From NCBI GenBank assembly GCA_002269645.1, contig NIVC01000063.1, positions 1-64,000 on the forward strand: a stretch of 64,000 bases of DNA. Direction: 5' to 3'. The notes under the pieces were generated by a model. The model had not been told where the DNA came from and ran no database searches. It saw only the letters and a program-made list of their open reading frames with translations. Below are positions 734 to 33,174 of the stretch, in pieces. The stretch is from Macrostomum lignano. Lineage: Eukaryota. A program made the position numbers and the translations under genes. The first letter of the stretch is position 1. Each line of letters starts with the position of its first letter.

Positions 734-1456
734 CTGAGGTTTAGAGAAGAAAGCTACATCAATGTTTTAGAGCAGCTCGATTCATTCCGATCTCAGCACA
801 CACACTCAGCAACATGTTAGAGAATTCCCGCTCCAAAACCAGCGATTAAACTTCTCTCAGATCTCAGCCCCAAGTGACGCAATTCACGCCACTCCGCGGC
901 TCTCGACTCAACTGTGGATGAGGCAATTTGCGCCACAATTGGCCCCAGCTTCCGCTGTTGAGGAGAGAATGGAGAGTTATGGCTAAGAGGTTGGATTAAT
1001 GCCCGTCTCATCTTTGCATTAGCGTGAACTAGGTGTAGTATAATGGCATCTGTGCTGGGCAAACTGCAAATGCAATGCACTTGTTTAGTCTTTTGTGTTT
1101 GCCTCCATTTCTCTTAGGCTCTTTTGTGAGCCTGGAGTGGAATGGGTGTTAGCCATCCACCCCTCGCGCGGTACATTGTGCCGCCTTTGTGCTCCGTCCT
1201 CTCTACCCCCCGTGGGGTGGGGGGGGGGGTTGCTCACCCGCTTATTTATTTGCACGCCGCCCTCTGTGCCCGTCGCTCGCTTTGGCTTTGCAGCTTAAGA
1301 TGTATTTCAGAATTAGTTCAACTAGATTTTGAAGTTCTCGTGAAAACTACATTGTGCTGAAACATTGGCCGCTCTCCTACTATAAATTCAACCGAGACCA
1401 CAGAATACTGTCACCCAGACCGTCTCAGTGACCCGGGAAATGTAGGTAGTTCTGCA

Positions 1457-1730
1457 CAGGGGCGTACAGGGGGGACAGGCAGGACATGTCCCCCTAGTAA
1501 AAGCAGTCTTTTGACCTGTTGTGAAAATAAATATTGCAATAATAGTGTTTCAGGGTGCTAAAATATACGAGTAGCACATGCGGCACCAAAATAAGTGCCT
1601 GCGGCGCTAAAATGAGTTCCTGTGTCGCCAAAATGAGCGCTGACAACACCGATTTTATTTAGTCATGTGCATCTACATGTAAAATTTTTGTTTTTTTTGC
1701 CCCCAATATGAAATCAATTGCAACCCCCTG
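1457..1730. mobile_element. hAT-like MITE in the intron of GPCR copy A
   Basis: CAGGGG...CCCCTG termini; flanks GTTCTGCA / GTTCTTTA match at 6 of 8 positions (degenerate TSD); internal GCGGCAC/GCGGCGC subrepeats. Confidence 0.55.
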
Positions 1731-2164
1731 GTTCTTTAATAACCGTTAGTTGGAAATAAAGCTGCAATGATAAAAAAGTAACTATTGTCTATCCCTCAGC
1801 GATCTCGTGGGCTAGACTTTCAATTTCGTATCACTAGTAGAGATGCTATACTGCAGAGCTGCATATATCGAGTCATTACATATAAAGCCAAGATCTAAGC
1901 CTAAACTATCGTATAACAATCGAGATGTAAAAAGTCCAAATGTTTTCTGACTGATCATTACTCCGCGCAGCCGATTGAATTCCTAATTGCAACTGGATCC
2001 CACTGACAAAAAATTGAACGGCACAACGGGTAGACAGATTATTGCAGAAAGAAAGGAGAGTTTTTCATGTACTCTAATATACCATCAATATTGATACTGT
2101 CGAAGTCTGTGGACAAAAAACTAGATAAGCATTTGGATCGATGCTTTAGCAGAAAAAAACTCAC

Positions 2165-7928: not shown

Positions 7929-8323
7929 CTAAGGAACGCTGTGTATGGCCATTGCTCAACCAATCAGGTAAATGTCGAGACCGCACTAGCAAACACGCAC
8001 TAGCATGCATACAATTAAAATGGACCTGCTGATGTCGCATCAGATTGAAGCTAATTGCTGGATGAGGACGCTTACTAGGCCACACGATAACTGCGTAAGT
8101 GAACTGTCAATCTGGAGTAATTACTTCGCTCCTAAATCGTTGCTAAAATTATAGTCCAATTTTTCAGACACGTACTACAGTGATTCTCGTAGGAACTCTA
8201 CCGTGACTTTTACTTAGAAAGTGGATTTGTATGAAACTTAACATGAAAAGGTTTTACCAAGGTTATAGATTGCGTAACCTTGGCTTCTGCTACATAGGTC
8301 TGTTTCTAAAAGCAATTCAGAGA

Positions 8324-9226
8324 TAGCTTGCGTCCCCCCTTTAGCTGGCGCCCCCTCTGTAGCTGGCGCCCCCTTTGTAGCTGGCGCCCCCTCTGTAGCT
8401 TGCGCCCCCTCTGTAGCTGGCGCCCCCTCTGTAGCTGGCGCCCCCTTTGTAGCTTGCGCCCCCTCTGTAGCTGGCGCCCCCTCTGTAGCTGGCACCCCCT
8501 CTGTAGCTGGCGCCCCCTCTGTAGCTGGCGCCCCCTTTGTAGCTGGCACCCCCTCTGTAGCTGGCGCCCCCTCTGTAGCTGGCACCCCCTCTGTAGCTGG
8601 CACCCCCTCTGTAGCTGGCACCCCCTCTGTAGCTGGCGCCCCCTCTGTAGCTGGCGCCCCCTTTGTAGCTGGCACCCCCTCTGTAGCTGGCGCCCCCTCT
8701 GTAGCTGGCACCCCCTCTGTAGCTGGCACCCCCTCTGTAGCTGGCACCCCCTCTGTAGCTGGCGCCCCCTGTAGCTGGCGTCCCCCCTTTAGCTTGCGCC
8801 CCCTCTGTAGCTGGCGCCCCCTCTGTAGCTGGCGCCCCTCTGTAGCTGGCGTCCCCTCTGTAGCTGGCGCCCCCTCTGTAGCTGGCGCCCCCTTTGTAGC
8901 TGGCACCCCCTCTGTAGGTGGCACCCCCTCTGTAGCTGGCGTCCCCCCTTTAGCTTGCGTCCCCTCTGTAGCTGGCGTCCCCTCTGTAGCTGGCACCCCC
9001 TCTGTAACTGGCACCCTTTCTGTAGCTGGCACCCCCTCTGTAGCTGGCACCCCCTCTGTAGCTGGCACCCCCTCTGTAGCTGGCACCCCCTTTGTAGCTG
9101 GCGCCCCCTCTGTAGCTGGCACCCCCTTTGTAGCTGGCGCCCCCTCTGTAGCTGGCACCCCCTCTGTAGCTGGCACCCCCTTTGTAGCTGGCGCCCCCTC
9201 TGTAGCTGGCACCCCCACTGTAGCTG
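8324..9226. repeat. 18-bp minisatellite (TGTAGCTGGC[G/A]CCCCCTC)n, ~50 units
   Basis: Tandem units seen directly; lies between the divergently oriented GPCR copies A and B. Confidence 0.95.
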
Positions 9227-9995: not shown

Positions 9996-12050
9996 ATGCT
10001 TTCCTCTGTCCTATGGGTGCTGCTAATTTGGTTCTCAGTAGCGACGGCAGACGACACGCCGAAAGCAGACGGCTACTGCCAAGCAGGAGACTTCATGCTG
10101 GTCGGACTGCACGGATCGAGCTATTGCACTGGCCACCCAACGGAGTCCGAGTACCTGCGTCAGGTTGCGCCCCATTTCTTACGAAGAAAGTTGGCAGAGA
10201 AGCCGGGCACAATATTCAGCCAGAGTGAAAACCTCACTTTAGGAGTCGTTTTTCTCGACACCTGCTACTCCGAGGCTAAAGGTGCCGCTGTTGCGAGTCG
10301 AGTTCGAGCTGCTTGGAGACGTCCAGCTCTGTTGGAAACTGGAGACCGGTGCAGTATGCTCAATGGCATCGATCCCGACCCGGTGTATTTAGTGCACGGC
10401 GTGATCGGCGGCTGGTCCAGCGCTGTCACACAGACGATGCTGTTCCCGTTGCAGAATGAAGCTCTGCCCACAGTCGGAACCGAGTGCAGCAGCGACTCGC
10501 TCAGCGATCGAGTTCGGTTTCCCAACTTTGTACGACTGGTGAGTCCGGACTCATATCAAGCGATGGTGATCATTGACCTGCTCCGCGAGTTCAACTGGAC
10601 GTACATCGGTCTGCTCTACGATCCAGGAAGTGTCTACAATACAAACATCGCTCTTCAGTTGTCATCCAGTCTTCCAGGCCGATTTCCTAGCGCCTGTTTT
10701 GCGTTCATTATTCCGATGACTAGCAACACAGAACCAATGGAATTAAAAGAGGCTATAAAACAGAAGCCAAACTTGCGAGCTCTGATTTGGCTGAAGGACG
10801 TTAATGACAACTTGAAAAGCGTCGACTTACTACAAGCAGTTGAAAGGACTGGAGTGTTTGTCATAATGGCGGATGAGAACTACAATCAAAATATCTATAC
10901 AAACAACTCATTCACCGTCTACTTCAATATGTTCCCAACACCCGACTTGATGCAGTGGTACCTGAACCTTACCTACTCTGACCTCTCTAAGATGTACAAC
11001 GGTGCAATCATGTTTGATCAGCTGATGAACTGCTCAACGTGTGCCTGTTGCACTACGAACTCGTCTCGTCGAGTGTCCGAGTCGAGCAGCTTCACCCCGT
11101 CCAGCATTGTCGCTCCAGTCGCTCGGATGCTGGACGCGTTTCTCTTATTCGCCCACGCGATCGACGCGGTGGCCAGGTCGGAGTGCGCGACCAGCCTGGA
11201 GCCGAGGCTGAACAAGTCGGCGCTGCTGCAGTGCGTGACCGGACCGCTGCTGCTGAGGCAGCTGTACCGAACGAACTTCACCGGCTACACGGGAGAGGTG
11301 AAACTCGACAGCAATGGAAACGGTCCCGCTTCCTATGTTGTGCTCTACCAGAGCAGCAAACAGGTGAGCTCGAGAGTGACTGTCGGTGTGTGGAGCTCTG
11401 AGCACGGTCTCAGCATGAATCGAAGCCTGATCTCGTGGCCTGGAGACGCGAGCGACCAACGCTCGGTACCAACGAGTGTGTGCTCTCTACCGTGCGGCAA
11501 TCGCGAGTACCGAGTGCAGGTGAGCAAGTGCTGCTGGGTGTGCAGACCGTGCAGCTCCGACGAGATCGTAGGGTCGAACGGTACGTTGTGCGAGAAGTGC
11601 GCCTCGCTTACCTGGCCGAGCTCGAACTACTCTCGCTGCGAGCCGCTCGCGCTGACCGTCCTCCGACCGAGTGACACTAGCGGCGTCGTGTTCATCGGCG
11701 TGTCGGCGCTCGGCTCTGCGGTCACCATGGCGACCGGAGTGTTCTTCTTGGCCAGGTCGAACGTGCCGCTGCTGAAGGCGTCCTCGCTAGAGCTGAGCGT
11801 GTTCCAACAGGTCGGCATCCAGCTCGGACTCGTCGACGTGGCGCTGTTCTTCGGCGAGCCGTCGCTCACCGTGTGCAACGTGCAGGCGTTTCTGTACCAC
11901 TTCAGCCTCACGATGGTGTACGCGGCTCTGCTGACCAAGAGCGCTCGGATCTACCGCGTGTTCGTGGGCTCCATGCGCGGCACATCTGGACTGAAATTCA
12001 CAGGGCGAAGGGCCGTAATAGTCTTGACAATTGCAGTTTGTATGTTGCAG
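9996..12050 (+). CDS. Class C GPCR copy B, exon 1 (mGluR/CaSR-like; 837 aa when spliced)
   Basis: ATG at 9996 with signal peptide, VFT, 9-Cys domain (PTSVCSLPC...CCWVCRPC...CEKC...C) and TM1-4. Phase-0 donor CAG|GTGAGA at 12050/12051. Confidence 0.95.
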
Positions 12051-13118
12051 GTGAGACATTTATGAAACGCAATTCTATTTTGAAAAATATTTTTTTTTAA
12101 ATTGAATAGTCTTTTTCAAGTTACGTCAACAGTGGTATGATACAGACACAGAAGCCGTCTGAAGGCAAACTTCCGTTCTCTGCTTGGTTGCAAGGGAGCG
12201 TTAATATCTTTGTAATCGGCAAATCTTGGATGAAGTCGCTGACAAGATTACTATTGACTGAGTATACAAATGAAAAAGGAGCTGCTGCTGCTGCTGCTGT
12301 TTTTTATCGATCGAATTGAGCAATCACATTAGGCAGTTCGTGGCAGTTTTTTCAAAGCTGACAAAGTCCGAGTCTTCAAGCAATTGCCGACTACAAGCAG
12401 CTCAAACGTGTCATATCGCCTTCCAATGCATAACGATAAAGTACGTTTTCGGTTGAAAGTTTTGCTAGAAAGCTCAATACTCAATTAGAACTGCCTAAAT
12501 TCAGTCTTTGCTCGTACTTCCTAATAAGTATCCTAACTTCTTCCTCCTTTTTCGTTTGTTTTGCTGCTCAATACGGTTGTAAATTTAAGAAGTTCCATAT
12601 TGAGTAGGGAAAGGCTTCGTCAGCCAAAGAGTCTGCTAGGTGAACCCGGGAGCAAACTTGGCAGCTTACTTATCGAGGTGCGGGGTCCATGGTTCACTTT
12701 TTGGAGGTTGGAAACGTGATACGAGCTAAGTAGTGCTTTGGGATTAAGGGATTAATAAAGCAGAGGATAATGACTCCGTGCTACTTTACTAGGCAAGAGT
12801 TTAGGCCTTGTCCTAGCTCCAAATTGAGTGGCAAAGGATGCTGTTTCAGCCTCCTAATTTAACCGGATAAACCAGAACCTGATCGTCAAAAACCTGGACG
12901 ATGAAAAATTTTACAACCTTTTTAAGCCGGAACTTGTTCTTTAAGAATCTATTTCCAGGAGTACAACGTCGTTTGCTTAAGCCTTATTTTTAAAATTGCA
13001 AAAAAGTATTTTCCAAGTGCTTCTGTCTCATAATCCAACACAGCACTGTGCGATCATACTGAACGCACTGCATAACACATCACTCTGTAGCATCTACCTG
13101 AACCTTCACGACACTCAG

Positions 13119-13577
13119 GTGGTGCTTCTGTGCAGCGTTCTCAGTACGCGTCCAATCCGCCCCGTCAAGCAGCTGCTCAACGGCCTCCGATCCGACGCCA
13201 GACCCGTCGTGGAGTTCCAGTGCGACTACTTCTCCAGCAGCCTGTGGATTCCCTACGCGCTCAACCTGCTGCTCATGCTGGTCACGTGCTCGCTGGCCGT
13301 GCGAGTTCGCAGCCTGCCGGACAATTTCCACGACAGCAAGTGCATCCTGGCCTTCACGGCGTGCGCCACCTTCGTGTGGATCGCCTTCATTCCCAGCCTC
13401 GTCACGATGGCCTCGCTGACGTCAGCAGGCGCTCTGCTGATCTTCGTTCTGCTGTTCACCAACCTGTTCGCGGTGAGCATCCTGTTCCTGCCCAAGGTCT
13501 ACGCCGTTGTGTTCGATAAGTCCGACAACGCCAAGCACTACAACAACAGTGTATTGGACGCCACAGGGACACAGTAG
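13119..13577 (+). CDS. Class C GPCR copy B, exon 2 (TM4-TM7, C-tail)
   Basis: Acceptor CTCAG|GTG at 13118/13119. Class C 7TM motifs (QC in ECL2, PYxxxL, RSLPDNFHDSKCI, FLPKVY). TAG at 13575-13577. Confidence 0.93.
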   Translation: MVLLCSVLSTRPIRPVKQLLNGLRSDARPVVEFQCDYFSSSLWIPYALNLLLMLVTCSLAVRVRSLPDNFHDSKCILAFTACATFVWIAFIPSLVTMASLTSAGALLIFVLLFTNLFAVSILFLPKVYAVVFDKSDNAKHYNNSVLDATGTQ

Positions 13578-14786: not shown

Positions 14787-16808
14787 TGTTGTAAATGCTG
14801 CGTCGCTCTCTTTCCCCTTGGCTCTGGTTGGCCGATGGGCCAGGCTGGGGTTTAGGGGCGCACGTCTCACCCCGGCCTGACCTACGTTCTGTTCAGTTTT
14901 CTTCTCTGCCCTGTGCCGCGGCGGCTTGTGATTGGCTGTCTGGTGGGGTGGGATTGTGGGAGTGGCTGTCCGCTTGCTGCCCGTCCCCCTGGCCCCTCCC
15001 CCTCTGCTATTTAAAGAGCGCGCCTTGACCCAACCCGTGTTCCAAGGGTCTACGACGTTTGCCTGCGGGACGTTTGCCAGCCGACGTTTGCCAGCCGACG
15101 TTTGCCAGCCGACGTTTGCCTGCCGAAAGTTTACCAGCTAAAATTTGCTAGCCAATTCACGTATAAAGCCAGTCAGTGAAAAATTTGATACTGAAATATT
15201 CGCAGTTTAGCGGTTTGACAAAAACCGTTTTTACTCCAACTTTTTGACGGTTATTTGCATATATACAAGTTCGAAAGCAAAATCTATATAAATTATGCAA
15301 TTTATTAGTCTAACATCTAATATCTAGTTTAATAACGATTTTCTTTGAATGTGAAAATATAGTTTACTTAATTTTTGACAATTGTGTATCCTTTTTTCTA
15401 GTTTGAGATGTTTGATTTTTGATGTGCGAAAGAAGACGCGCAGATTAAAACGGGAATCTCCAGCGATTTAAGATATGAAGCAAACAAAAAGAGCTGCTGA
15501 GCGGTAATTCTGGCTCATATATTTCTCAGTTCATTGGGAGATCTAAAAGTAAGCAAATTGATTCCAATTCTGTTGTATTACTACGCAAGTAAGCCAGGAA
15601 ACCGCGATCTCAACGTTCATGTGTCAGACGAGTCGAATGCGGTACGTTTTTATAGTAAGCTAGCTGAATAGCCAGACAAGCCGCCAGTTGCAAGCTAGTA
15701 GGATAGCAAGCGCTAGACACTTCGTATACAAAGCTTAGTCACGCCAAGGACTACTAAAGTAGAAGGACGCGCAGCACTCGAAATCTATGGAAAATGTTTT
15801 GAAGGCCATAGGGAGATAGGAAGTTTTCATCTTTTCAGCACAACAATTGTTATTGCTTTCATACGAGGCAAACTCATGAATGTTCATCTTTTGATATGTT
15901 TTGCCAAAATCGTTGTTAAACTAGGTATTGCGTTAGACTAATGAACTGCATAGTTTATATAGATTTTGCTTTCGAACTTGTATATATGCAAATAACCGTC
16001 AAAAAGTTTGAGCAAAAACGGTTTTTGTCAAACCGCTAAACTGCGAATATTTCAGTATCAAATTTTTCACTGACTGGCTTTATATTGGCTAGCAAATTAC
16101 AGCTGGCAAACTTCCAGCAGGCAAACATCGGCTGGCAAATGTCGGCTGGCAAACGTCCCGCAGGCAAACGTCGGCTGGCAAACGTCGGCTGGCAAATGTC
16201 GGCTGGCAAACTTCGGCTGGCAAACGTCCCGCAGGCAAACGTCGGCTGGCAAACGTCGGCTGGCAAACGTCCCGCAGGCAAACGTCGGCTGGCAAACGTC
16301 CCGCCGGCAAACGTCGGCTGGCAAACTTCGGCTGGCAAACGTCCCGCAGGCAAACGTCGGCTGGCAAACGTCGGCTGGCAAACGTCGGCTGGCAAACGTC
16401 CCGCAGGCAAACGTCGGCTGGCAAACGTCCCGCAGGCAAACGTCGGCTGGCAAACGTCCCGCAGGCAAACGTCGCTATCCCTGTTCCAAACCACCTGCTC
16501 TCGTGTGGCCGTGCGAAAACAGTGCAACTCAGTTTAATACTTCACACATCGTGGCCAGTAGACCGCGGTCTGTTGCGCACTTCTGTTGTGACCAAAGTTT
16601 TGTGTGCAAATAGTACGAGTTCTCTTTCTCTTTGGGGCACCTGTGAACTCTCGCAGTAGTGGTACCAGCCCGTTGCGGCGGTGCTAGGCTCGGGAAGCGC
16701 TGCGAACTTGAATAGCATCGAGCGTTTCCTCTTCGGCGGCGCTTAGGCCCCTATACCCCACGCAGCTGCTTGCGTGTCTCTCTGGGCCGTTACCTGGGGG
16801 ATACAACA
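14787..16808 (+). mobile_element. Probable solo LTR (~580 bp) interrupted by a foldback element
   Basis: TGTTGTA...TACAACA termini, reverse CCAAT at 14930, TATTTAAA at 15008. Flanking 5-mers GTAGG/ATAGT match only 3 of 5. Confidence 0.55.
15046..16481. mobile_element. Non-autonomous foldback/MULE-like DNA transposon
   Basis: GGG...CCC ends; perfect 8-bp TSD TGTTCCAA (15038-15045 and 16482-16489); ~290-bp inverted arms carrying tandem CCAGCCGACGTTTG subrepeats, expanded on the right arm. Confidence 0.85.
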
Positions 16809-16944: not shown

Positions 16945-17743
16945 CAGGGACAACTAAAACCCTCGGGACGCGAAACGAGCCAATTCATGGCAAAAAATCT
17001 GAGGGGCTCGCTTAAAAGTATTGTTCTATGGCTTTTTCAAGTCTTCTCTGCTATCAAGCAAATTAAAATTGCTTTAGTTGCGGCCAGCAGTGAAGCTAAG
17101 CTGAACTAAATCAAGAGAAGCATTTTTTATTCACTTGATGAAATGCCAAGAAAGTGCAGCGTATTTCCGTGCTCGTCAAATTACAACTCTGAAGCCGTTC
17201 GAAGCAGGTACAGGAGAAGTTGGCACAGAAACCGACGCAGCCGATGTGATCCAGTCAGTTTTTGCTAGTCTATCAGGAGCTCAGCGAAACTGCGTAATTA
17301 TGTTTGACGAAATGTACATACAACCGTCCGTTCGATATCGATGCCGTCACCTTCTGGGTCGAGCCGTCGACGATCCGGACCAGGTTCCTTTATGTACGAG
17401 CTACTGACTGTTTGTGTCGTCTTGTCCTTGGAGTTCCGTATTTGCTTCTATCTCCTTGCCGTTGGAGTTTCATCTTCGCTTTCATCCTTTATCTTCTTGC
17501 CGTTGGAGTTTTTTTGTTGATATGGCGGTTACTTTATTGTAGATACATTGTAATTATATCACTGGTTCCTATTCTTTAAATTAAATACTCGACATTGCCT
17601 CGCTTTACTATTTAATCTAACCGTTAATGCCTGATAGCAGAGAAGACTTAAAAAAGCCATAGAACAATACTTTTAAGCGAGCCCCTAAGATTTTTTGCCA
17701 TGAATTGGCTCGTTTCGCGTCCCGAGGGTTTTAGTTGTCCCTG
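16945..17743 (+). mobile_element. Internally deleted P-element/THAP9-like transposon
   Basis: ~115-bp near-perfect TIRs (CAGGGACAACTAAAACCC...); direct repeat TGGCCCTAT on both flanks; THAP start MPRKCSVFPCSSNY at 17143; catalytic-region motif CVIMFDEMYIQPSVRY in ORF 17135..17407. Confidence 0.85.
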
Positions 17744-18227
17744 TGGCCCTATACTTTTATGAGACTTTCACGAAAAGACGCGTAATTTCCTCTATTTCCC
17801 TTACATATATTGTAATTAATTAAATAAGCTGTTTACACCATGGGTTACTGCGAGGAGCTTTATTTATTTGTAAGAAAAATTTACAGTGTACTTGCGATAA
17901 CTGTATGAGAAACTGCAGGGACCTTTGCTTGACACAGATATACCTATATAACGACATGTGGGTTAATGATAATGTAATTGACAGATCCAGATAAAGGCTT
18001 TTCTGGTGTTAAGAAATTATTTTATTGCCCAAACACTTCAGTGAAAATACTGATGTTTGCAACAATAAGTACAAGCGGCTGTAAGCGATAGCTTACTGAT
18101 AGTAAAGCTATTTGAGCATGGCGCGAATTCCTCACATGGTGGACTAGAAAATGTCGCCATGTGCAAGGGCGCATAAATAGCAGTTCCACTCAGCTGGCTA
18201 GAGGTGGAGCCGACCTCGTGTGGCTAT

Positions 18228-18270
18228 GACTGACTGACGAGGGCAAAAAAGCCCGAAACCGGTCTCAGTC
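18228..18270 (+). ncRNA. Minimal type I hammerhead ribozyme
   Basis: Stem I GACTGA/TCAGTC, core CTGACGA, stem II GGGC-AAAAAA-GCCC, GAAA, palindromic ACCGGT stem III, GTC cleavage triplet (cut after 18264). All conserved core nucleotides are present. Confidence 0.85.
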
Positions 18271-19939
18271 TGCCCCGCATGGTTCGATTCCCACTTTTAG
18301 CCGCTGATAGCGGCATTTCAGTAAACGGTTCTGAATATTCAGATTCAGTTGCATTGTTCTACTCTTAGTAGTCAGGTCAATTCACTACTGGAGACTACCA
18401 GACGTGAAAGAAAATCATAGTTGAATAAATCAGTGACATTGAATCAGTGCCCCAACATGGATTTAAGTTCAAAGTTTGATTTTCTCTTTTTTCGTGTCTA
18501 ACAACGAAATTACATTTATTAGTCTGTCGTGGATCTGAACTGAAAAGCAAGCAGATCGAGAATTGGCATCGAGTGTAGCTTCAATAGCATTTTTAATCCT
18601 GACAGCCCAAGAAATCCGATGTCTCTAAGAAGGTTTTCGCATAGCAAATAGCAATTAGTGAATCGCTCTTTGATGCAATTCTGTTTCTAAGTCAAACTTA
18701 TGCATGTTATGGAGGTCGCTGCGTTTACCTGGCTTCAAGTTAAAGAAAGCCAAACAAGTTTCAGAAGTGTCAAACAATCAATTTATCGCTCAGCAAATTC
18801 CTATTCAGATTTTCAAAGCTTTTCTCTTGCTGCTTTTCCAATAAAATCGTAGATAAAATCGTAAAATCTACGATTTTATTCTTTGTGCTTGGCCAAATGG
18901 AAGGTGCACTAGTGCACAGCGTTTGGTTCGTCAGTAGCTTTTGGGGGCTTAGTCAATGGAATGGAGCCCGAATTACTAGACTCCATCTTCAAGATTTGAA
19001 GCTTCGAGTTGAGTTTTGTCGAGCAGTTAGTTAAGTAATACCGAAAAATGCGAAATTTCACTTCAAAGTAATCAATTTCGCTTTACAATAGCACTTTTTA
19101 TCATTAAAATATAATTTAGACTCTAGTAATACCTACCTACCTACCTACAAACCATTTTTAGTATATGGATCATTCCTGAAATCATCAATTTAACACATTC
19201 ATTTACCGTTCCGCTTCGTTTTTGCTTTTAGAAATTCGAGAGTCTTCTTAACATTTTTCTAAGAAAATGAAGGAACTTATCAGAACGAGTTAAAATATGT
19301 TACGTTAATGCATTGCCTTGCAAAATATAGAATGCATAGCTACAGACAACCATACATTTGCACAATAAATTGTATAGTAAATTTAAATAAATACGCAAGT
19401 TACGGAATGACATCGTAATCACCGGCTTTGAATAAAAACTGACGTGAATTGCGCTGCTCTAAAAAGCTTCGACATGACTAAAAACTGACTCCACCCTCTC
19501 TAAACAGCATAGTGCTTAATGGAGAAAACAGCAGCAAATATATGCTTCTGCTGTCTGAATCATAAATGTAACAAGTCGACTCAGGTCGGGACAAGGCTCC
19601 ACTATCTCAGATTAACTCGACTCGAAACTCGTCAAGTATACGATTAGCAATGCCGCGACCCCCTTTTCCAGGTCACTTCCTGGAGCTCCTATTGCTTCTA
19701 GTTCACTTCTCTGGCTCCATTTAGTAGCTTAAATTGACATCCATTTGCTAGTTTAAAGGTCTCTTCAGTAGCTTATCAAGCATAACGCATGCTTGCTGAT
19801 CCTTTGCTATTGGTCTAATGTTGTGGATACCATGCAACCTCTAATATTTAATAGTTATTGAGGGCTTTTTGCAAATGAAATATGCAGAAAGGGGAAATAG
19901 GGGAACCCCATCCTCGTCCCCGTAGACGCATTCTGGTGC

Positions 19940-20888: not shown

Positions 20889-21494
20889 CTATCAATTGCA
20901 GCATCTACAGATTCTCAAACAGGCTCTTTATGCCTACTGTCAATCGCTATAGGCCCCTAAACTGTGAGCTTAAAATATATTTTTTTAAGTTATGCACAGT
21001 GCAAACTAAGCTTAATTTGGTTTAGCCAACTAAAACGTTCGGGTAAAGCCTCAGGTAAATCTAGACGTAGCTACGAGCGAATGTTTCACCAACGTACCGA
21101 CCTACAACTTTGTCGGTCATTCGTAAAATATTTACCTCTGTCTCGGTGCCTCGGCGGAGAATATCACAGTCAAGTGGCTTTCTGAAGATCACTAGCATCT
21201 CCAAAAAATGCACTTTTATCAAAAACATTTTTATCGATAGCTAATTCGTAGCTGGATGTGAAAAAATGTTTTTAGCGCCGATTGGTTAAGCAATCAAGCT
21301 TCTCTATGCCACTCATGGCCAATTGAATTCACAAAACCAAATTGGCTGGAGCCCCTTTTACTCAGGATGAAAACTTCGTTTTGATTCTGCTTAGAAGCTG
21401 TCAGCATTTGTCATTCTGAAGAAAAAAATTGAAAACAGAAGCTCACATAATATTTGACGAGCTGAGAGTCAATTTCGATCGGATAGTTATAACT

Positions 21495-23567
21495 ATGCAA
21501 GTACAACAGATAATTGCAATTGTTCTAATGACTCAGACTCCAGCATCATCGTTTATTAAAGTCGCAGCTGCACAGCCAAGGACAAATAGCTACTGTGTGG
21601 CTGGAGACTTCACACTAGCAATGCTGCACAGTACCAGCTACTGTAGAAATAGTCTCAAAGAGGAGGAATTCCTGCGACAGTTGGTGCCTCGCTTCGTGCT
21701 CGAGAAAGTGGCAGCGAAGCCGGGCACAATATTCAGCCAGAGTGAAAACTTCACTTTAGGAGTCGTTTTTCTCGACACCTGCTACTCCGAGGCTAAAGGT
21801 GCCGCTGCTGCGAGTCGAGTTCGAGCTGCTTGGAGACGTCCGGCTCTGTTGGAAACTGGAGACCGGTGCAGTATGCTCAATGGCATCGATCCCGACCCGG
21901 TGTATTTGGTGCACGGTGTCGTTGGCGGCTGGTCCAGCACCGTCACTCAGACTTTGTTATTCCCATTGCAGAACGAAGCTCTGCCCACAGTCGGAACCGA
22001 GTGCAGCAGCGACTCGCTCAGCGATCGAGTTCGGTTTCCCAACTTTGTACGACTGGTGAGTCCGGACTCATATCAAGCGATGGTGATCATCGACCTGCTC
22101 CGCGAGTTCAACTGGACGTACATCGGTCTGCTCTACGATCCAGGAAGTGTCTACAACACAAACATAGTAACGCAGCTAACCTCAATTCTGCCAACTCGAT
22201 TCCCCCTTGCCTGTCTAGCCTTTCTAATGCCACTGACAAGTGCAAATGTAGCAGCAGCTATAATAGAACAATATCAAACCCAACCAAATTTACGAGCACT
22301 GATTTGGCTAAAAAGTATCGACAATAATTTGGAGACTATTCAACTTCTTCAAGCATTGGGAAAAGCTGGCGTGTATCTCATTATGGTTGATGGGAACTAC
22401 AATAAAAATATCTATACAAACAACTCATTAACCGTCTACTTCAATATGTTCCCAACACCCGACTTGATGCAGTGGTACCTGAACCTTACCTACTCTGACC
22501 TCTCTAAGATGTACAACGGTGCAATCATGTTTGATCAGCTGATGAACTGCTCAACGTGTGCCTGTTGCACTACGAACTCGTCTCGTCGAGTGTCCGAGTC
22601 GAGCAGCTTCACCCCGTCCAGCATTGTCGCTCCAGTCGCTCGGATGCTGGACGCGTTTCTCTTGTTCGCCCACGCGATCGACGCGGTGGCCAGGTCGGAG
22701 TGCGCGACCAGCCTGGAGCCGAGGCTGAACAAGTCGGCGCTGCTGCAGTGCGTGACCGGACCGCTGCTGCTGAGGCAGCTGTACCGAACGAACTTCACCG
22801 GCTACACGGGAGAGGTGAAACTCGACAGCAATGGAAACGGTCCCGCTTCCTATGTTGTGCTCTACCAGAGCAGCAAACAGGTGAGCTCGAGAGTGACTGT
22901 CGGTGTGTGGAGCTCTGAGCACGGTCTCAGCATGAATCGAAGCCTGATCTCGTGGCCTGGAGACGCGACTGACCAACGCTCGGTACCAACAAGTGTGTGC
23001 TCTCTACCGTGCGGCAATCGCGAGTACCGAGTGCAGGTGAGCAAGTGCTGCTGGGTGTGCAGACCGTGCAGCTCCGACGAGATCGTAGGGTCGAACGGTA
23101 CGTTGTGCGAGAAGTGCGCCTCGCTTACCTGGCCGAGCTCGAACTACTCTCGCTGCGAGCCGCTCGCGCTGACCGTCCTCCGACCGAGTGACACTAGCGG
23201 CGTCGTGTTCATCGGCGTGTCGGCGCTCGGCTCTGCGGTCACCATGGCGACCGGAGTGTTCTTCTTGGCCAGGTCGAACGTGCCGCTGCTGAAGGCGTCC
23301 TCGCTAGAGCTGAGCGTGTTCCAACAGGTCGGCATCCAGCTCGGACTCGTCGACGTGGCGCTGTTCTTCGGCGAGCCGTCGCTCACCGTGTGCAACGTGC
23401 AGGCGTTTCTGTACCACTTCAGCCTCACGATGGTGTACGCGGCTCTGCTGACCAAGAGCGCTCGGATCTACCGCGTGTTCGTGGGCTCCATGCGCGGCAC
23501 ATCTGGACTGAAATTCACAGGGCGGAGGGCCGTAATAGTCATGACAATTGCAGTTTGTATGTTGCAG
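21495..23567 (+). CDS. Class C GPCR copy C, exon 1 (842 aa when spliced)
   Basis: First ATG in ORF 21429..23675 is at 21495; same domain order as copy B; phase-0 donor CAG|GTAACT at 23567/23568. Confidence 0.93.
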
Positions 23568-23720
23568 GTAACTCGTTCTTGGTTTTTTTGCTTCAGAAGA
23601 ACTCCCGCATTTTTTCGTATTTTACTTTTCCTATGTTACTCTAAAGCTGAAGTTTACCTAGAAAATATATTGTAAATAAGGGTTATTTAATATTCAATAT
23701 TGGACGATCCATCTCTTCAG

Positions 23721-24176
23721 GTGTTGCTACTGTGCAGCGTTCTCAGCGCGCGTCCGATCCGCCCCGTCAAGCTGCTGCTCAACGGCCTCCGATCCGACGC
23801 CAGACCCGTCGTGGAGTTCCAGTGCGACTACTTCTCCAGCAGCCTGTGGATTCCCTACGCGCTCAACCTGATGCTCATGCTGGTCACGTGCTCGCTGGCC
23901 GTGCGAGTTCGCAGCCTACCGGACAATTTCCACGACAGCAAGTGCATCCTGGCCTTCACCGCGTGCGCCACCTTCGTGTGGATCGCCTTCATTCCCAGCC
24001 TCGTCACGATGGCCTCGCTGACGTCAGCAGCCGCTTTGCTGATCTTTGTTCTGCTTTTCACCAACCTGTTCGCGGTGAGCATCCTGTTCCTGCCCAAGGT
24101 CTACGCCGTTGTGTTCAATAAGTCCGACGATGCCAAGCACTACAACAATGGCGTCATATGTGCCACTGTGGCTTAA
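23721..24176 (+). CDS. Class C GPCR copy C, exon 2
   Basis: Acceptor TCTTCAG|GTG at 23720/23721 after a 153-bp intron; TM4-TM7; TAA at 24174-24176. Confidence 0.93.
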   Translation: MLLLCSVLSARPIRPVKLLLNGLRSDARPVVEFQCDYFSSSLWIPYALNLMLMLVTCSLAVRVRSLPDNFHDSKCILAFTACATFVWIAFIPSLVTMASLTSAAALLIFVLLFTNLFAVSILFLPKVYAVVFNKSDDAKHYNNGVICATVA

Positions 24177-26633: not shown

Positions 26634-27406
26634 CCCTATTGGAATAAATGTTAAAAACCCGCAGACATGCATTTTAGAAAAGAGTCAAACTATTTTACCA
26701 CGCTTTAGGATTATTAGAGACGTTCCAAAAGATCTGCAGTTTTGTCGAAATCAAAATTCGCTAACTTTCCAAAATCAAAATTGAAATTTCCCAAAATCAT
26801 AATTCAGAAAAACAAAGTTTAGTATGATCAACACTCACTACTTTACTTTTAATTTACTGCTTAAGCAAAAAGTAATACATGTATATGTATAGACATGCGC
26901 AACCTTGGGAATCACTTGGCCGTTTCTATTGGCAACACACACATGTAAGTCGCTATTGGCTGAGAGCAGTCATGTGACTTATATTCCATCCAATAGCGAC
27001 AAGTTTACATGTGTGTGTTGCCAATAAAAATGGCCAGGTGAATCCCTAGGTTGCGCCCAAGCATGTATATGTAGTAGAAAGTAGTTTATTTTTAGCAACT
27101 TTTTAGACACTACCAAAATTTTCATTTCTAAATTTTTTGAAATTGAAATTCCCTCTAAAAAATTTCAAATTTTGGAAAATTGAAATTGAATTTTCGGAAC
27201 ATCTCTAAGCTTAATAAATTACAAGTGTATAAGCCCTTTCAACAGAGGTATTATACCCATTTCCATGTATATGTATTTGCTAGAGCAGCAGCCAGTAAGA
27301 AAGGGCAGCGCGCGCAGGCAATGCGCCTGTGCGCGCACTGTGCTTTAGAAAAATTTCAAAAGTGCGCCGGACACCGTCTGCGGTTTTACAACTTTTTCCT
27401 ATAGGA
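26634..27406. mobile_element. CCCTA-terminal MITE, copy 1 (middle layer)
   Basis: Homologous end to end with 28186-28779; flanks TGCGGGAT / CGCGGGAC match 6 of 8. Confidence 0.8.
26890..27061. mobile_element. 172-bp hairpin insertion (inner layer)
   Basis: ~65-bp imperfect inverted arms; flanked by duplicated CATGTATATGTA; absent from the sister MITE at 28430-28441. Confidence 0.8.
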
Positions 27407-29274: not shown

Positions 29275-29519
29275 GTTGGTTTTGTTTGAATCTTCCGTAG
29301 AGTTGGCACTAACTATGAAATAATGCAGCCAGATATGTGTCTGCCAGCCAGACACACTGCCAGACACACTGCCAGACACACTGAACTTCATGGGCGGACA
29401 GGCAGTCAAATTGGTACAGTACAGACGAACGCTGAAAACCACGGCAAGGCAGACACAGAGACGGGCAGCCGGCCACTGCACTGTTGGAGGCTACCTTCAG
29501 GCAGTCAGAGATTTCCACA

Positions 29520-29953
29520 CAGAAGGGCGGACAGACAGACACACTGGTACAGACAGATATACAGGCACAGGAACAGACACAGGAGGCAGAGACGCACAAA
29601 GAGATAGACAGACTGACAGACAGACATACACAGAAAGACAGACAGACACATACACAGATAGACAGACAGACATACACAGAAAGACAGACAGACACATACA
29701 CAGACAGACATACACAGAAAGACAGACAGACAGACACATACACAGATAGACAGACAGACAGACATACACAGAAAGACAGACAGACAGACAGACAGACATA
29801 CACAGAAAGACAGACAGACAGACATACACAGATAGACAGACAGACATACACAGAAAGACAGACAGACAGACACATACACAGACAGACAGACAGACAGACA
29901 TACACAGATAGACAGACAGACATACACAGAAAGACAGACAGACAGACACATAC

Positions 29954-29992
<39 letters not shown>

Positions 29993-30197
29993 GTCAGACA
30001 GCCAGACAGACAGTCAGACAGACAGACAGACAGACACAGACAGACACATACACAGAGAGACAGACAGACAGACACATACACAGATAGACAGACAGACAGA
30101 CAGACATACACAGAAAGACAGACAGACAGACAGACATACACAGACAGACAGACAGACACATACACAGAGAGACAGACAGACAGACAGACAGACATAC

Positions 30198-30232
<35 letters not shown>

Positions 30233-30455
30233 CAGACAGACACATACACAGAGAGACAGACAGACAGACAGACATACACAGAAAGACAGACAGACAGACA
30301 CATACACAGTCAGACAGACAGACAGACAGACACATACAGACAGACAGTCAGACAGACAGACAGACAGACACAGACAGACACATACACAGAGAGACAGACA
30401 GACAGACAGACAGACATACACAGAAAGACAGACAGACAGACAGACAGACATACAC

Positions 30456-30496
<41 letters not shown>

Positions 30497-30827
30497 CATA
30501 CAGACAGACAGACAGACAGTCAGACAGACAGACAGACACAGACAGACACATACACAGAGAGACAGACAGACATACACAGAAAGACAGACAGACAGACACA
30601 TACACAGACAGACAGACAGACAGACAGACACAGACAGACATATACACAGAGAGACAGACAGACAGACGCATACACAGACAGACAGACAGACAGACAGACA
30701 CATACAGACAGACAGACAGACAGTCAGACAGACAGACATACACAGACAGACAGACAGACACATACACAGAGAGACAGACAGACAGACAGACAGACATACA
30801 CAGAAAGACAGACAGACAGACACATAC

Positions 30828-30858
<31 letters not shown>

Positions 30859-31033
30859 CAGACAGACACATACACAGAGAGACAGACAGACAGACAGACA
30901 TACACAGAAAGACAGACAGACAGACACATACACAGACAGACAGACAGACAGACAGACACATACAGACAGACAGACAGACAGACAGACACAGACAGACACA
31001 TACACAGAGAGACAGACAGACAGACACATACAC

Positions 31034-31074
<41 letters not shown>

Positions 31075-31113
31075 TACACAGAAAGACAGACAGACAGACA
31101 GACACACATACAC

Positions 31114-31158
<45 letters not shown>

Positions 31159-31217
31159 CATACAGACAGACAGACAGACAGTCAGACAGACAGACAGACA
31201 CAGACAGACACATACAC

Positions 31218-31250
<33 letters not shown>

Positions 31251-31575
31251 TACACAGAAAGACAGACAGACAGACACATACACAGACAGACAGACAGACA
31301 GACACAGACAGACATATACACAGAGAGACAGACAGACAGACACATACACAGACAGACAGACAGACAGACACATACAGACAGACAGTCAGACAGACAGACA
31401 GACAGACACAGACAGACACATACACAGAGAGACAGACAGACAGACACATACACAGATAGACAGACAGACAGACAGACAGACATACACAGAAAGACAGACA
31501 GACAGACAGACAGACATACACAGAGAGACAGACAGACAGACACATACACAGAAAGACAGACAGACAGACATACAC

Positions 31576-31616
<41 letters not shown>

Positions 31617-31943
31617 CATACAGACAGACAGACAGACAGTCAGACAGACAGACAGACACAGACAGACACATACACAGAGAGACAGACAGACATACACAGA
31701 AAGACAGACAGACAGACACATACACAGACAGACAGACAGACAGACAGACACAGACAGACATATACACAGAGAGACAGACAGACAGACACATACACAGACA
31801 GACAGACAGACAGACACATACAGACAGACAGACAGACAGTCAGACAGACAGACATACACAGACAGACAGACAGACACATACACAGAGAGACAGACAGACA
31901 GACAGACAGACATACACAGAAAGACAGACAGACAGACACATAC

Positions 31944-31974
<31 letters not shown>

Positions 31975-32145
31975 CAGACAGACACATACACAGAGAGACA
32001 GACAGACAGACAGACATACACAGAAAGACAGACAGACAGACACATACACAGACAGACAGACAGACAGACACATACAGACAGACAGACAGACAGACAGACA
32101 CAGACAGACACATACACAGAGAGACAGACAGACAGACACATACAC

Positions 32146-32178
<33 letters not shown>

Positions 32179-32217
32179 TACACAGAAAGACAGACAGACA
32201 GACAGACAGACATACAC

Positions 32218-32262
<45 letters not shown>

Positions 32263-32321
32263 CATACAGACAGACAGACAGACAGTCAGACAGACAGACA
32301 GACACAGACAGACACATACAC

Positions 32322-32354
<33 letters not shown>

Positions 32355-32687
32355 TACACAGAAAGACAGACAGACAGACACATACACAGACAGACAGACA
32401 GACAGACACAGACAGACATATACACAGAGAGACAGACAGACAGACACATACACAGACAGACAGACAGACAGACACATACAGACAGACAGACAGACAGTCA
32501 GACAGACAGACAGACAGACACAGACAGACACATACACAGAGAGACAGACAGACAGACACATACACAGATAGACAGACAGACAGACAGACAGACATACACA
32601 GAAAGACAGACAGACAGACAGACAGACATGCACAGAGAGACAGACAGACAGACACATACACAGAAAGACAGACAGACAGACACATAC

Positions 32688-32722
<35 letters not shown>

Positions 32723-32793
32723 CATACAGACAGACAGACAGACAGACACAGACAGACAGACACATACACAGACAGACAGACACACAGACAGAC
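29520..32793. repeat. Compound (GACA)n satellite with CATACACA/GAAA/GAGA variants, ~3.3 kb, in SPRING1 intron 2
   Basis: Seen directly; higher-order blocks recur within it. Confidence 0.95.
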
Positions 32794-32823
32794 ATCCTCA
32801 GCCGATCGCTCGCTGCTCCGCAG

Positions 32824-33174
32824 GCAATACACGTGCCGCAATTCAGTCGGCGGCCGAGACTCCCTAGTCGACGAGCGAGGCGTGGTCTGTTCTCGCGCGG
32901 ATCTCCTGACCGGCGGCTGCTGCCCCTACCCCAGCAAGCGGTCTGTGAGGTACCACTGCTCCGCTTGTAATCAGTTTAGTCTGTGCTGCAAAAGCTTCGA
33001 ATTCTGCGTCTCGTGCTGTCTGCAGCCGAATCAGCGACCGATCCTAGAGGCGGTGCTTCTCAGAGCGCGAGCACTCGGTGACAAAGTTTTACTGCGGGTG
33101 GCCGATCCGTTTCAGTTGTGCCTGGCCCGCTGCCGGACCAGCTCTGAGAGCGTGCAGCACGAGAACGCTTATAG
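32824..33174 (+). CDS. SPRING1: SPRING1 exon 3 (Cys-rich UPF0454 domain)
   Basis: CRNSVGG...DERGVVC...GGCC...CC...[10 protein letters not shown]...[22 protein letters not shown] matches the SPRING1/C12orf49 signature CVSCCLQP...CRTSSQSVQHENTYR. Confidence 0.92.

What the first reader, a model, noticed from the sequence alone, without database searches (positions are those of the whole stretch)
18182..18300. Hammerhead ribozyme nested between pol III A- and B-box-like motifs in a tRNA-like scaffold
Seen: a complete type I hammerhead (18228-18270). Its stem III is the palindrome ACCGGT with a 2-nt loop. Stem I extends through an internal loop (GTGTGGC-TAT / T-GCCCCGC). Upstream lies a hairpin GTTCCAC-TCAGCTGGCTAGAG-GTGGAGC whose loop resembles a tRNA D-arm/A box. 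Downstream lie GGTTCGATTCCC (B box, 18281), TTTT and a GCCGCT-GAT-AGCGGC hairpin. Established: minimal hammerheads with palindromic stem III occur in Penelope-like elements and satellite/retrozyme RNAs and cleave as dimers; Schistosoma SM-alpha joins a tRNA-like head to a hammerhead. Inference: here the ribozyme sits where the anticodon loop would be, inside the internal promoter. That suggests a pol III-transcribed, self-cleaving, possibly circularising small retroelement.
Basis: partly seen in the sequence, partly recalled or inferred. Interest (0 to 1): 0.82.

Follow-up and report, generated by a model that had tools for sequence, protein, structure and literature searches.

The report
Hammerhead ribozyme capping a long RNA hairpin
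An intact self-cleaving hammerhead RNA of the kind found in newt satellite DNA and animal "retrozymes" sits at the tip of a 118-base hairpin between two receptor genes; it carries fragments that look tRNA-derived, but the claim that it is a tRNA-like, polymerase-III-transcribed mini-gene is not borne out.

Summary
The hammerhead is real. All core nucleotides are intact, with helix I 18228-33/18265-70, helix II 18241-44/18251-54, a palindromic helix III ACCGGU, and cleavage after C18264. The Rfam HH9 model scores 34.7 bits (E 5.5e-5 for the window), below the gathering score of 52 only because the helix III loop is missing. The new finding is that helix I continues outward into a 118-nt imperfect hairpin, 18190-18307 (-58.3 kcal/mol, z -5.4). 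It folds better on the + strand because of five G.U pairs. The structured RNA therefore runs through the T-run. No cloverleaf exists: ARAGORN, the Rfam tRNA model and 1332 deletion constructs all fail. The B box (GGTTCGATTCC) and a D-arm-like motif are each unique in the window, so tRNA ancestry is plausible. The element is single-copy in 64 kb, with no tandem array, target-site duplication or A-tail. No relatives could be retrieved. Best reading: a solitary copy of a rod-like, dimer-competent hammerhead element (retrozyme or Sm-alpha-like). Polymerase III transcription is unproven, and one unit cannot make a circle.

The parts
18190..18307 (+). Whole structural unit: an imperfect RNA hairpin (rod) with the hammerhead at its tip
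   Evidence: Fold of 18186-18312: -58.3 kcal/mol, z -5.41, 0/200 shuffles. Minus strand: -51.7, z -2.78. With the ribozyme replaced by GAAA the arms give z -5.9, 0/1000.
18228..18270 (+). Type I hammerhead proper. Helix I 18228-33/18265-70; core CUGACGA 18234-40; helix II 18241-44/18251-54 with A6 loop; GAA 18255-57; helix III palindrome ACCGGU 18258-63; C17 = 18264; predicted cleavage between 18264 and 18265.
   Evidence: Direct reading. Only pattern match in the window. Rfam HH9 34.7 bits.
18217..18227 (+). 5' strand of the helix I extension (18217-18223) plus the 5' side of the internal loop, CUAU (18224-18227). This geometry matches the 'extended hammerhead'.
   Evidence: Aligned to the HH9 outer helix and internal loop. 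MFE pairs listed.
18271..18281 (+). 3' side of the internal loop, UGCC (18271-18274), plus the 3' strand of the helix I extension (18275-18281)
18190..18203 (+). tRNA D-arm / A-box-like motif TCAGCTGGCTAGAG. In the fold it is the 5' strand of the outermost helix.
   Evidence: Unique in the window. Pairs with 18295-18307. The canonical A-box consensus is not met on the + strand.
18281..18291 (+). B-box consensus GGTTCGATTCC (tRNA T-loop-like). In the fold it is largely paired with 18207-18218.
   Evidence: Only match in the window, 0.2 expected. Pairs listed.
18295..18298 (+). In the fold it pairs with AGAG 18200-18203 through two A-U and two G.U pairs.
18299..18307 (+). AGCC-GCUGA, the 3' strand of the outermost helix beyond the T-run.
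   Evidence: outer arms z -5.3.
18183..18189 (+). It is competitive only if the RNA ends at the T-run.
   Evidence: for RNA 18182-18298, -41.3 with this hairpin against -39.7 with the rod. For the longer RNA the rod wins.
18173..18179 (+). TATA-like ATAAATA, preceded 18 bp upstream by a PSE-like stretch at 18132-18154. This is only a lead for an external (type 3) promoter.
   Evidence: Direct reading. The resemblance to PSE/TATA spacing is recalled from memory, not tested. It is contradicted by the helix that needs 18190-18203 in the RNA.

Best explanation
This is a solitary genomic copy of a small non-coding hammerhead element of the animal 'extended type I' kind, as in newt satellite 2, HH9 and non-LTR retrozymes.

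How it is built and works:
- The + strand RNA folds into a 118-nt rod (18190-18307). The distal end of the rod is the ribozyme.
- The 6-bp inner helix I, the 4x4 internal loop and the A-rich loop II give the geometry that stabilises the active fold.
- Helix III is only the palindrome ACCGGU, so efficient cleavage after C18264 is expected when two copies pair through it (double hammerhead).
- The D-arm-like and B-box motifs in the two arms are most likely remnants of a tRNA-derived (SINE-type) promoter head. This would be comparable to Schistosoma Sm-alpha, but now built into the rod.
- The RNA that shaped the sequence ran through the T4 run. Present transcription is therefore more likely read-through, or leaky pol III, than a cleanly T4-terminated pol III unit.
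- From this single unit, cleavage gives a 5' piece with a 2',3'-cyclic phosphate and a 3' piece with a 5'-OH. About 35 base pairs of helix I hold them together. No circle can form.

Shown: the ribozyme motif, the rod, the strand asymmetry, the uniqueness of the motifs, and the absence of a cloverleaf and of further copies in the window.
Inferred: mobility, tRNA ancestry, the mode of transcription, and activity.
For: - Core and helices are intact, and HH9 aligns end to end.
- The cofold of two copies spontaneously forms the intermolecular ACCGGU helix, about 3 kcal/mol below two monomers.
- Rod: z -5.4 on the + strand against -2.8 on the minus strand, with five G.U pairs.
- The outer arms beyond the HH9 model are still significant: z -5.3, 0/1000.
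- The wider 293-nt region is also unusually structured: z -4.8.
- The B box and the D-arm-like motif are each unique in the window and lie in tRNA order.
- Literature: animal retrozyme RNAs are highly self-paired, have a weak helix III and act as dimers. Dispersed solo monomers are common and enriched in intergenic DNA. Extended newt hammerheads need an internally looped helix I (PMC7761336, PMC7229834, PMC6155905, bioRxiv 10.64898/2026.07.22.740005).
- Sm-alpha has a pol III promoter, and newt satellite 2 has an snRNA-type promoter (PMC2220036).
Against: - Only one copy could be examined, so there is no covariation, copy-number or expression evidence.
- There is no tandem partner, target-site duplication or A-tail.
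- No Penelope-like or other reverse-transcriptase ORF was seen in the ORFs tested.
- The complete integrity of the ribozyme, the B box and the rod could equally reflect host selection on a domesticated RNA.
- In the thermodynamic ensemble only about 0.3% of monomers are in the cleavage-competent fold. An alternative pairing, GACUGACUG with CGGUC..CAGU, competes with it.
Confidence: 0.5

Rival explanations
1. One reading: an autonomous pol III transcription unit. An internal tRNA-type promoter (A-like box 18190-18203, B box 18281-18291) starts transcription near 18175-18182 and terminates at T4 18295-18298. The product is a roughly 115-nt self-cleaving RNA, a SINE-like element in the manner of Sm-alpha.
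For: - The B box is perfect, unique in the window, and followed 3 nt later by T4.
- A D-arm-like motif lies about 90 nt upstream in the right order.
- Precedent: Sm-alpha combines a pol III promoter with a hammerhead (PMC2220036, PMC2770079).
Against: - The canonical A box is not met on the + strand.
- There is no cloverleaf by any test.
- The T-run lies inside a significant helix that continues 9 bp beyond it. A T4-terminated RNA would give no reason to maintain that helix.
- The Sm-alpha head is a full tRNA-Gln-like cloverleaf with the ribozyme downstream, which is not the case here.
- There is no second copy, tail or target-site duplication.
Confidence: 0.25
2. A host-exapted cis-acting ribozyme, like the mammalian HH9/HH10 or Clec2 hammerheads. 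It would lie in a long 3' extension of the upstream class C GPCR gene, in a 5' UTR or intron of the downstream one, or in an lncRNA. Cleavage would regulate that transcript.
For: - It has the same orientation as both flanking GPCR paralogues, which are + strand at 9996-13577 and 21429-24176.
- It is single-copy in the window.
- The ribozyme is fully intact.
- The best Rfam match is HH9, itself an exapted intronic ribozyme.
Against: - It lies 4.6 kb downstream of one gene and 3.1 kb upstream of the other, with a transposon and tandem repeats in between.
- Neither of the other two paralogues has an equivalent element in the sequence available.
- A helix III that depends on dimerisation is poorly suited to a single-copy cis ribozyme.
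Confidence: 0.12
3. A small RNA gene with an external, U6-type (type 3) pol III promoter. PSE-like 18132-18154 and TATA-like 18173-18179 would start transcription near G18203/4, with the end at T4. The product would be a 95-nt RNA whose 5' and 3' ends pair.
For: - The spacing of 18 bp from PSE-like to TATA-like, and about 25-30 bp from TATA to G18203/4, fits the vertebrate type 3 layout. This is recalled from memory and is only a lead.
- RNA 18203-18298 folds with paired ends and a U-tail, z -3.1.
- Newt satellite 2 uses an snRNA-type promoter (PMC2220036).
Against: - The helix 18190-18203 / 18295-18307 requires sequence upstream of that start and downstream of that stop.
- The PSE match is loose and untested.
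- No octamer or DSE was seen.
Confidence: 0.05
4. A chance resemblance: no functional or ancestral ribozyme is present.
For: - It is below the Rfam gathering score.
- The simple core pattern alone is expected 0.39 times per window.
Against: - The covariance-model E-value is 5.5e-5 for the window, with a full-length alignment.
- All helices are perfectly paired.
- The rod has z -5.4.
Confidence: 0.02

Closest known systems
Extended type I hammerheads of caudate amphibian satellite 2 and vertebrate non-LTR retrozymes (Rfam HH9/Hammerhead_1 clan CL00010)
   Same: - Type I topology and a CUGANGA...GAAA...GUC core.
- A-rich loop II.
- A 6-bp inner helix I followed by an internal loop and an outer helix.
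- Helix III reduced to a short palindrome, implying double-hammerhead cleavage.
- A highly self-paired surrounding RNA.
- An intergenic solo copy.
Sources; PMC6155905, PMC7229834, PMC7761336. The string GAAACCGGTC also occurs in the 1986 newt satellite 2 paper, but that text could not be opened.
   Different: - There is no tandem array here.
- The unit, if it is only the 118-nt rod, is shorter than the roughly 150-400 nt retrozyme repeats.
- It carries tRNA-like D-arm and B-box motifs. The retrozyme literature states that no promoter is present in retrozymes (PMC7761336).
Schistosoma Sm-alpha / Sj-alpha SINE-like elements
   Same: A type I hammerhead combined with tRNA-derived pol III promoter sequence in one short non-coding unit (PMC2770079, PMC2220036).
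   Different: - The Sm-alpha head is a complete cloverleaf that tRNAscan calls tRNA-Gln, and its ribozyme lies downstream. Here no cloverleaf exists.
- Here the ribozyme lies between the D-like and T-like motifs.
- Sm-alpha has thousands of copies. Copy number here is unknown, with one copy in 64 kb.
Minimal hammerheads of Penelope-like elements (pLTR)
   Same: A type I hammerhead with a vestigial or palindromic helix III, thought to act as dimers and dispersed in metazoan genomes (PMC7761336).
   Different: - PLE hammerheads usually lack the loop-loop tertiary elements. This one has the helix I internal loop and the A6 loop II.
- No RT or GIY-YIG ORF and no pLTR repeat were seen in the ORFs tested in the window.
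Mammalian exapted hammerheads HH9/HH10
   Same: HH9 is the best-scoring covariance model. Both are single-copy in their locus.
   Different: HH9 has a stable helix III with a loop. The deletion of that loop is why this sequence misses the gathering score.

Membership tests
Hammerhead ribozyme, type I (Rfam clan CL00010) | Conserved core: CUGANGA, GAAA, and a cleavage triplet NUH | tested here: met
   CUGACGA 18234-40, GAA+A 18255-58, GUC 18262-64. The pattern is unique in the window.
Hammerhead ribozyme, type I (Rfam clan CL00010) | Three helices around the core, with helix I open-ended | tested here: met
   Helix I 6 bp, helix II 4 bp, helix III palindrome. HH9 aligns over model positions 1-77. 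The constrained fold is 2.9 kcal/mol above the MFE.
Hammerhead ribozyme, type I (Rfam clan CL00010) | Score at or above the family's curated gathering threshold | tested here: not met
   34.7 bits against 52 for RF02275. No hit at gathering. The deficit is the missing helix III loop.
Hammerhead ribozyme, type I (Rfam clan CL00010) | Site-specific self-cleavage giving 2',3'-cyclic phosphate and 5'-OH ends | not testable with these tools
   Needs in vitro transcription or mapping of RNA ends.
Non-LTR retrozyme / satellite-2-type element | Weak or palindromic helix III that permits a double hammerhead | tested here: met
   ACCGGU 18258-63. The cofold forms the intermolecular helix.
Non-LTR retrozyme / satellite-2-type element | Tandem repeats of about 150-400 bp, each carrying a hammerhead | tested here: not met
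   No second copy by blastn, pattern search, TRF or Rfam in the 64 kb. Solo monomers are known for these families.
Non-LTR retrozyme / satellite-2-type element | Highly self-paired unit RNA | tested here: met
   z -5.4 for 18186-18312 and z -4.8 for 18060-18352.
Non-LTR retrozyme / satellite-2-type element | Accumulation as circular RNA | not testable with these tools
   There are no expression data. A single unit cannot yield a circle.
tRNA gene / tRNA-like structure | Cloverleaf recognised by tRNA finders or by a covariance model | tested here: not met
   ARAGORN finds 0 in the window. Nothing is found with introns allowed unless thresholds are dropped to 80%. 0 of 1332 excision constructs score at default or 95% thresholds. 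The Rfam tRNA model is silent at E<=10.
Pol III type 2 (tRNA-type) promoter | B box GGTTCGANNCC | tested here: met
   18281-18291 is the only match in the window.
Pol III type 2 (tRNA-type) promoter | A box TRGCNNAGTGG, 30-90 bp upstream of the B box on the same strand | tested here: not met
   No + strand match within one mismatch in the element. Only the D-loop half (AGCTGG..TAGAG) is present. A minus-strand match lies at 18186-96.
Pol III type 2 (tRNA-type) promoter | T-run terminator defining the RNA 3' end | tested here: inconclusive
   T4 is present at 18295-98, but it is embedded in a helix that continues to 18307.
tRNA-derived SINE (Sm-alpha-like) | Many dispersed copies with target-site duplications and a 3' tail | tested here: not met
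   One copy in the window. No flanking direct repeat of 8 nt or more and no A-rich tail. Genome-wide copy number could not be tested.
Penelope-like element | Adjacent RT plus GIY-YIG ORF, and pLTR repeats | tested here: inconclusive
   No such Pfam domains were found in the ORFs tested near the element or among the large ORFs of the window. Not every ORF was scanned.

The most novel reading that the evidence does not exclude
The hammerhead has been built into the body of a tRNA-derived pol III promoter, replacing the anticodon-to-variable region between the D-arm and T-arm segments. The two promoter halves have co-evolved to base-pair with their flanks into a rod. This would be a self-contained, self-transcribed, self-cleaving micro-element. 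It would supply the promoter that animal retrozymes are said to lack, and it would be a second, independent tRNA-hammerhead fusion besides Sm-alpha.
Probability: 0.2. Interest if true: 0.7.

Novelty: new member of a known kind. Interest (0 to 1): 0.38.

Why it matters
How animal hammerhead elements (retrozymes) are transcribed is an open question. The literature states that they carry no promoter. Only Sm-alpha (pol III) and newt satellite 2 (snRNA-type) are known exceptions. A hammerhead rod with a perfect B box inside one arm would be a concrete candidate for a third solution, if copies elsewhere confirm it. If they do not, the locus is one more dispersed solo hammerhead, useful mainly for annotation. 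Two practical lessons follow. The curated Rfam threshold misses this dimer-type ribozyme. And the apparent promoter and terminator motifs around it are better explained as strands of one long helix.

Tried and rejected
1. Metagenome scan for hammerhead + ACCGGT + B box. It gave 7 loci, all chance matches inside bacterial coding sequence with no helix II. The same pattern in viral contigs gave 0.
2. Identifying the organism.
   - The GPCR ORFs found nothing at 1e-30 and only about 25%-identical hits at 1e-5.
   - An exhaustive HMMER search gave best relatives at 28-34% identity, all without names.
   - Their contigs (ENA ERZ26222911, ERZ25767047; NCBI GCA_022702875.1 and GCA_022702835.1) share the gene's exon layout. 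They contain no hammerhead by pattern or by Rfam.
   - The accession numbers are in no held paper.
3. Exact look-ups gave nothing on record: the window GPCR ORF, the 30-aa minus-strand ORF that overlaps the ribozyme, and a neighbouring 55-aa ORF. A 50-aa pseudo-peptide across the ribozyme also found nothing.
4. tRNA with an insert. ARAGORN with introns, relaxed thresholds and 1332 excision constructs gave only a meaningless 66-nt pseudo-cloverleaf at the 90% threshold. It does not use the D-like or T-like motifs as arms.
5. A tRNA-Sec-gene origin (PSE + TATA + B box) was considered from memory. It was rejected because generic tRNAs match the D-arm motif as well or better, and because the TATA-like box would sit at about -3 of such a tRNA.
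6. Target-site duplications or a decayed second tandem unit. Only the short similarity TTCCACT / TTCCCACT (18184 / 18288) was seen, with nothing beyond it.
7. The papers on the newt satellite 2 and Sm-alpha sequences (PMC108972, PMC308520, PMC361788; full text of PMC2114352) are not held. Direct sequence comparison with those elements was therefore impossible.
Full report
**What is in the sequence**

The region 18182-18315 reads GCAGTTCCAC TCAGCTGGCTAGAG GTGGAGCC GACCTCGTGTGG CTAT GACTGA CTGACGA GGGC AAAAAA GCCC GAA ACCGGT C | TCAGTC TGCC CCGCATGGTTCGATTCCCAC TTTT AGCCGCTGATAGCGGC.

The hammerhead is complete:
- Helix I is 18228-33 / 18265-70.
- The core CUGACGA is at 18234-40.
- Helix II is GGGC/GCCC with an A6 loop.
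- GAA is at 18255-57.
- Helix III is the palindrome ACCGGU at 18258-63.
- C17 is at 18264, so cleavage falls between 18264 and 18265.

**Is it more than chance?**

At Rfam's curated thresholds nothing is reported in the window. With E-value reporting, the HH9 model (RF02275) aligns over its full length (1-77) at 18216-18288 with 34.7 bits. The E-value is 6e-7 for the 701-nt region and 5.5e-5 for the whole 64 kb, and it is the only hammerhead hit. The shortfall against the gathering score of 52 is the five-column deletion of the helix III loop.

The alignment also places a 4-nt internal loop (CUAU / UGCC) after a 6-bp inner helix I, followed by an outer helix at 18219-23 / 18275-79. This is the geometry of the 'extended' hammerheads.

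A crude core pattern alone would occur 0.39 times per window by chance. The covariance score and the perfect helices are therefore what carry the case.

**Dimer behaviour**

A 2-nt hairpin loop cannot form, so the monomer has essentially no helix III. Cofolding two copies, either of the 65-nt core or of the whole rod, spontaneously gives the double hammerhead with a 6-bp intermolecular ACCGGU/ACCGGU helix. It lies about 3 kcal/mol below two monomers.

In the monomer an alternative pairing competes, GACUGACUG with CGGUC..CAGU. The cleavage-competent fold is 2.9 kcal/mol above the MFE, about 0.3% of the ensemble.

The literature describes the same behaviour for newt satellite 2 and vertebrate retrozyme hammerheads. 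There, monomer activity depends on an internally looped helix I and a matching loop II (PMC6155905, PMC7229834).

**The new observation: a 118-nt rod**

Folding 18186-18312 gives one long imperfect hairpin, 18190-18307, at -58.3 kcal/mol with z -5.41 and 0 of 200 shuffles as good.

Outward from the ribozyme the pairs are:
- 18217-23 / 18275-81
- 18211-15 / 18282-86
- 18204-09 / 18288-94
- AGAG 18200-03 / UUUU 18295-98
- GGCU 18196-99 / AGCC 18299-302
- UCAGC 18190-94 / GCUGA 18303-07

With the ribozyme replaced by a tetraloop, the arms alone give z -5.9 (0/1000). The outermost part, beyond anything the HH9 model covers, still gives z -5.3 (0/1000).

Five pairs are G.U, which would be A-C mismatches on the other strand. 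Accordingly the minus strand folds 6.6 kcal/mol worse, with z -2.8. The structure is therefore an RNA-level feature of the same strand as the ribozyme. The wider 293 nt (18060-18352) is also unusually structured, at z -4.8.

The 'A box / D-arm' motif (18190-18203) is the 5' strand of the outer helix. The 3' strand of that helix is the 'TTTT terminator' plus the first arm of the 'GCCGCT hairpin'. A helix that continues 9 bp past the T-run has no reason to exist if the RNA ends at the T-run. It likewise requires the RNA to start at or before 18190.

This weakens two readings:
- The T4-terminated pol III unit.
- An alternative I considered, a U6-type external promoter (PSE-like 18132-54, TATA-like 18173-79, start near G18203/4). 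This would give a neat 95-nt RNA with paired ends (z -3.1). Its promoter resemblance rests only on my memory of consensus spacing.

It wins only if the RNA is truncated at the T-run, at -41.3 against -39.7.

**Is it tRNA-like?**

At the level of structure, no:
- ARAGORN finds no tRNA in the window.
- With introns allowed it finds nothing until thresholds are dropped to 80%.
- The Rfam tRNA model reports nothing at E<=10.
- None of 1332 constructs with the ribozyme excised scores at default or 95% thresholds.
- The one family of hits at 90% is a pseudo-cloverleaf that does not use the D-like or T-like motifs as arms.
- The T stem has 2-3 pairs, and the T-run begins where an acceptor strand should be.

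At the level of motifs, yes:
- GGTTCGATTCC is a perfect B box and the only one in the window (0.2 expected).
- TCAGCTGGCTAGAG is a typical D-stem/loop string and is also unique (0.06 expected for a pattern I defined after seeing it).

Both lie within about 50 nt of the ribozyme, on its strand and in tRNA order. By rough arithmetic that is very unlikely to be coincidence, even after a generous post-hoc correction. The canonical A-box consensus, however, is not met on the + strand. I conclude that descent of the flanks from a tRNA or SINE head is likely. Present promoter function is open.

**Copies and relatives**

Within the window there is no second copy, tandem unit, target-site duplication or A-tail.

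Outside the window I could get nothing useful:
- Viral contigs gave none.
- The source organism and its close relatives are absent from the protein collections.
- The flanking genes are three paralogous class C GPCRs, with ANF_receptor, NCD3G and 7tm_3 in one exon. Their best relatives among 1.8 billion representatives are only 28-34% identical and unnamed.
- Contigs of those relatives share the exon layout but hold no hammerhead.
- Exact and peptide look-ups across the ribozyme found nothing.

Covariation, copy number and conservation are the decisive tests, and they remain undone.

**Comparison with known systems**

- Newt satellite 2, HH9 and non-LTR retrozymes are the closest in the ribozyme itself. 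They share the core, the A-rich loop II, the looped helix I, the vestigial palindromic helix III and a self-paired RNA. Solo monomers of such families are common and enriched in intergenic DNA (bioRxiv 10.64898/2026.07.22.740005). The element here differs in lacking a tandem array and in carrying tRNA-like motifs. Reviews state that retrozymes have no promoter (PMC7761336).
- Sm-alpha of Schistosoma is the closest in concept, with tRNA-derived pol III promoter sequence plus a hammerhead. Its head is a complete tRNA-Gln-like cloverleaf and its ribozyme lies downstream (PMC2770079, PMC2220036).
- Penelope-like element hammerheads share the minimal helix III. They usually lack the tertiary-contact loops, and no PLE ORF was seen among the ORFs tested.

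**Verdict**

Estimated probabilities:
- Solitary copy of a rod-like, dimer-competent hammerhead element with relics of a tRNA-derived promoter, cutting once after C18264: about 0.5.
- Host-exapted cis ribozyme: about 0.12.
- U6-type small RNA gene: about 0.05.
- Chance: about 0.02.

Circularisation from this locus alone is excluded by its anatomy, which has one cleavage site.

The element is a new member of a known kind. The arrangement with the ribozyme between the D-like and T-like segments would be a new variant if other copies confirm it.

Noticed in passing
window 16945-17743: A short DNA transposon with 116-bp terminal inverted repeats that are 97% complementary. It encloses a remnant ORF starting MPRKCSVFPC (THAP-finger-like by eye) with a weak TNP-like RNase H N-terminal hit (E 6e-4, below cut-off). 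It looks like an internally deleted P-element/THAP9-type element, about 440 bp upstream of the hammerhead rod.
   Followed up: partly
window 340-4213 (-), 9996-13577 (+), 21429-24176 (+): Three paralogous class C GPCR genes, up to 99% identical in blocks. ANF_receptor, NCD3G and the first half of 7tm_3 lie in a single ORF. Copy B has about 0.9 kb between the two 7TM halves. In copy C the halves are in the same frame, separated by a stop at 23673-23675. Distant relatives in ENA and NCBI assemblies have the same break point, so it is probably a conserved intron.
   Followed up: partly
window 15053-15138 and 16102-16474: Arrays of a 14-nt unit (CGACGTTTGCCAGC) in opposite orientation, forming a large inverted repeat of tandem repeats between GPCR copy B and the hammerhead.
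   Followed up: no
window ~29500-32900: About 3.4 kb of a degenerate short-period (8-14 nt), strongly A-over-T-skewed repeat (AT skew up to 0.87). It creates long spurious ORFs on both strands.
   Followed up: no
window 26905-27048: A long hairpin in AT-rich DNA that hits several unrelated miRNA precursor models on both strands, far below their gathering scores (mir-249 39.8 bits against 70). It is probably just a palindrome or MITE-like foldback.
   Followed up: no
window 18186-18196 (-): On the minus strand, CAGCTGAGTGG matches the A-box consensus TRGCNNAGTGG with one mismatch. This is a by-product of the CAGCTG palindrome in the D-arm-like motif. No B box accompanies it on that strand.
   Followed up: yes
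window 8238-9218 (-): An ORF with a marginal Collagen triple-helix repeat hit (E 1.7e-6, 28.1 bits against a cut-off of 27.2) in a GC-rich stretch with several overlapping ORFs. It may be a Gly-X-Y-like low-complexity repeat rather than a gene.
   Followed up: no
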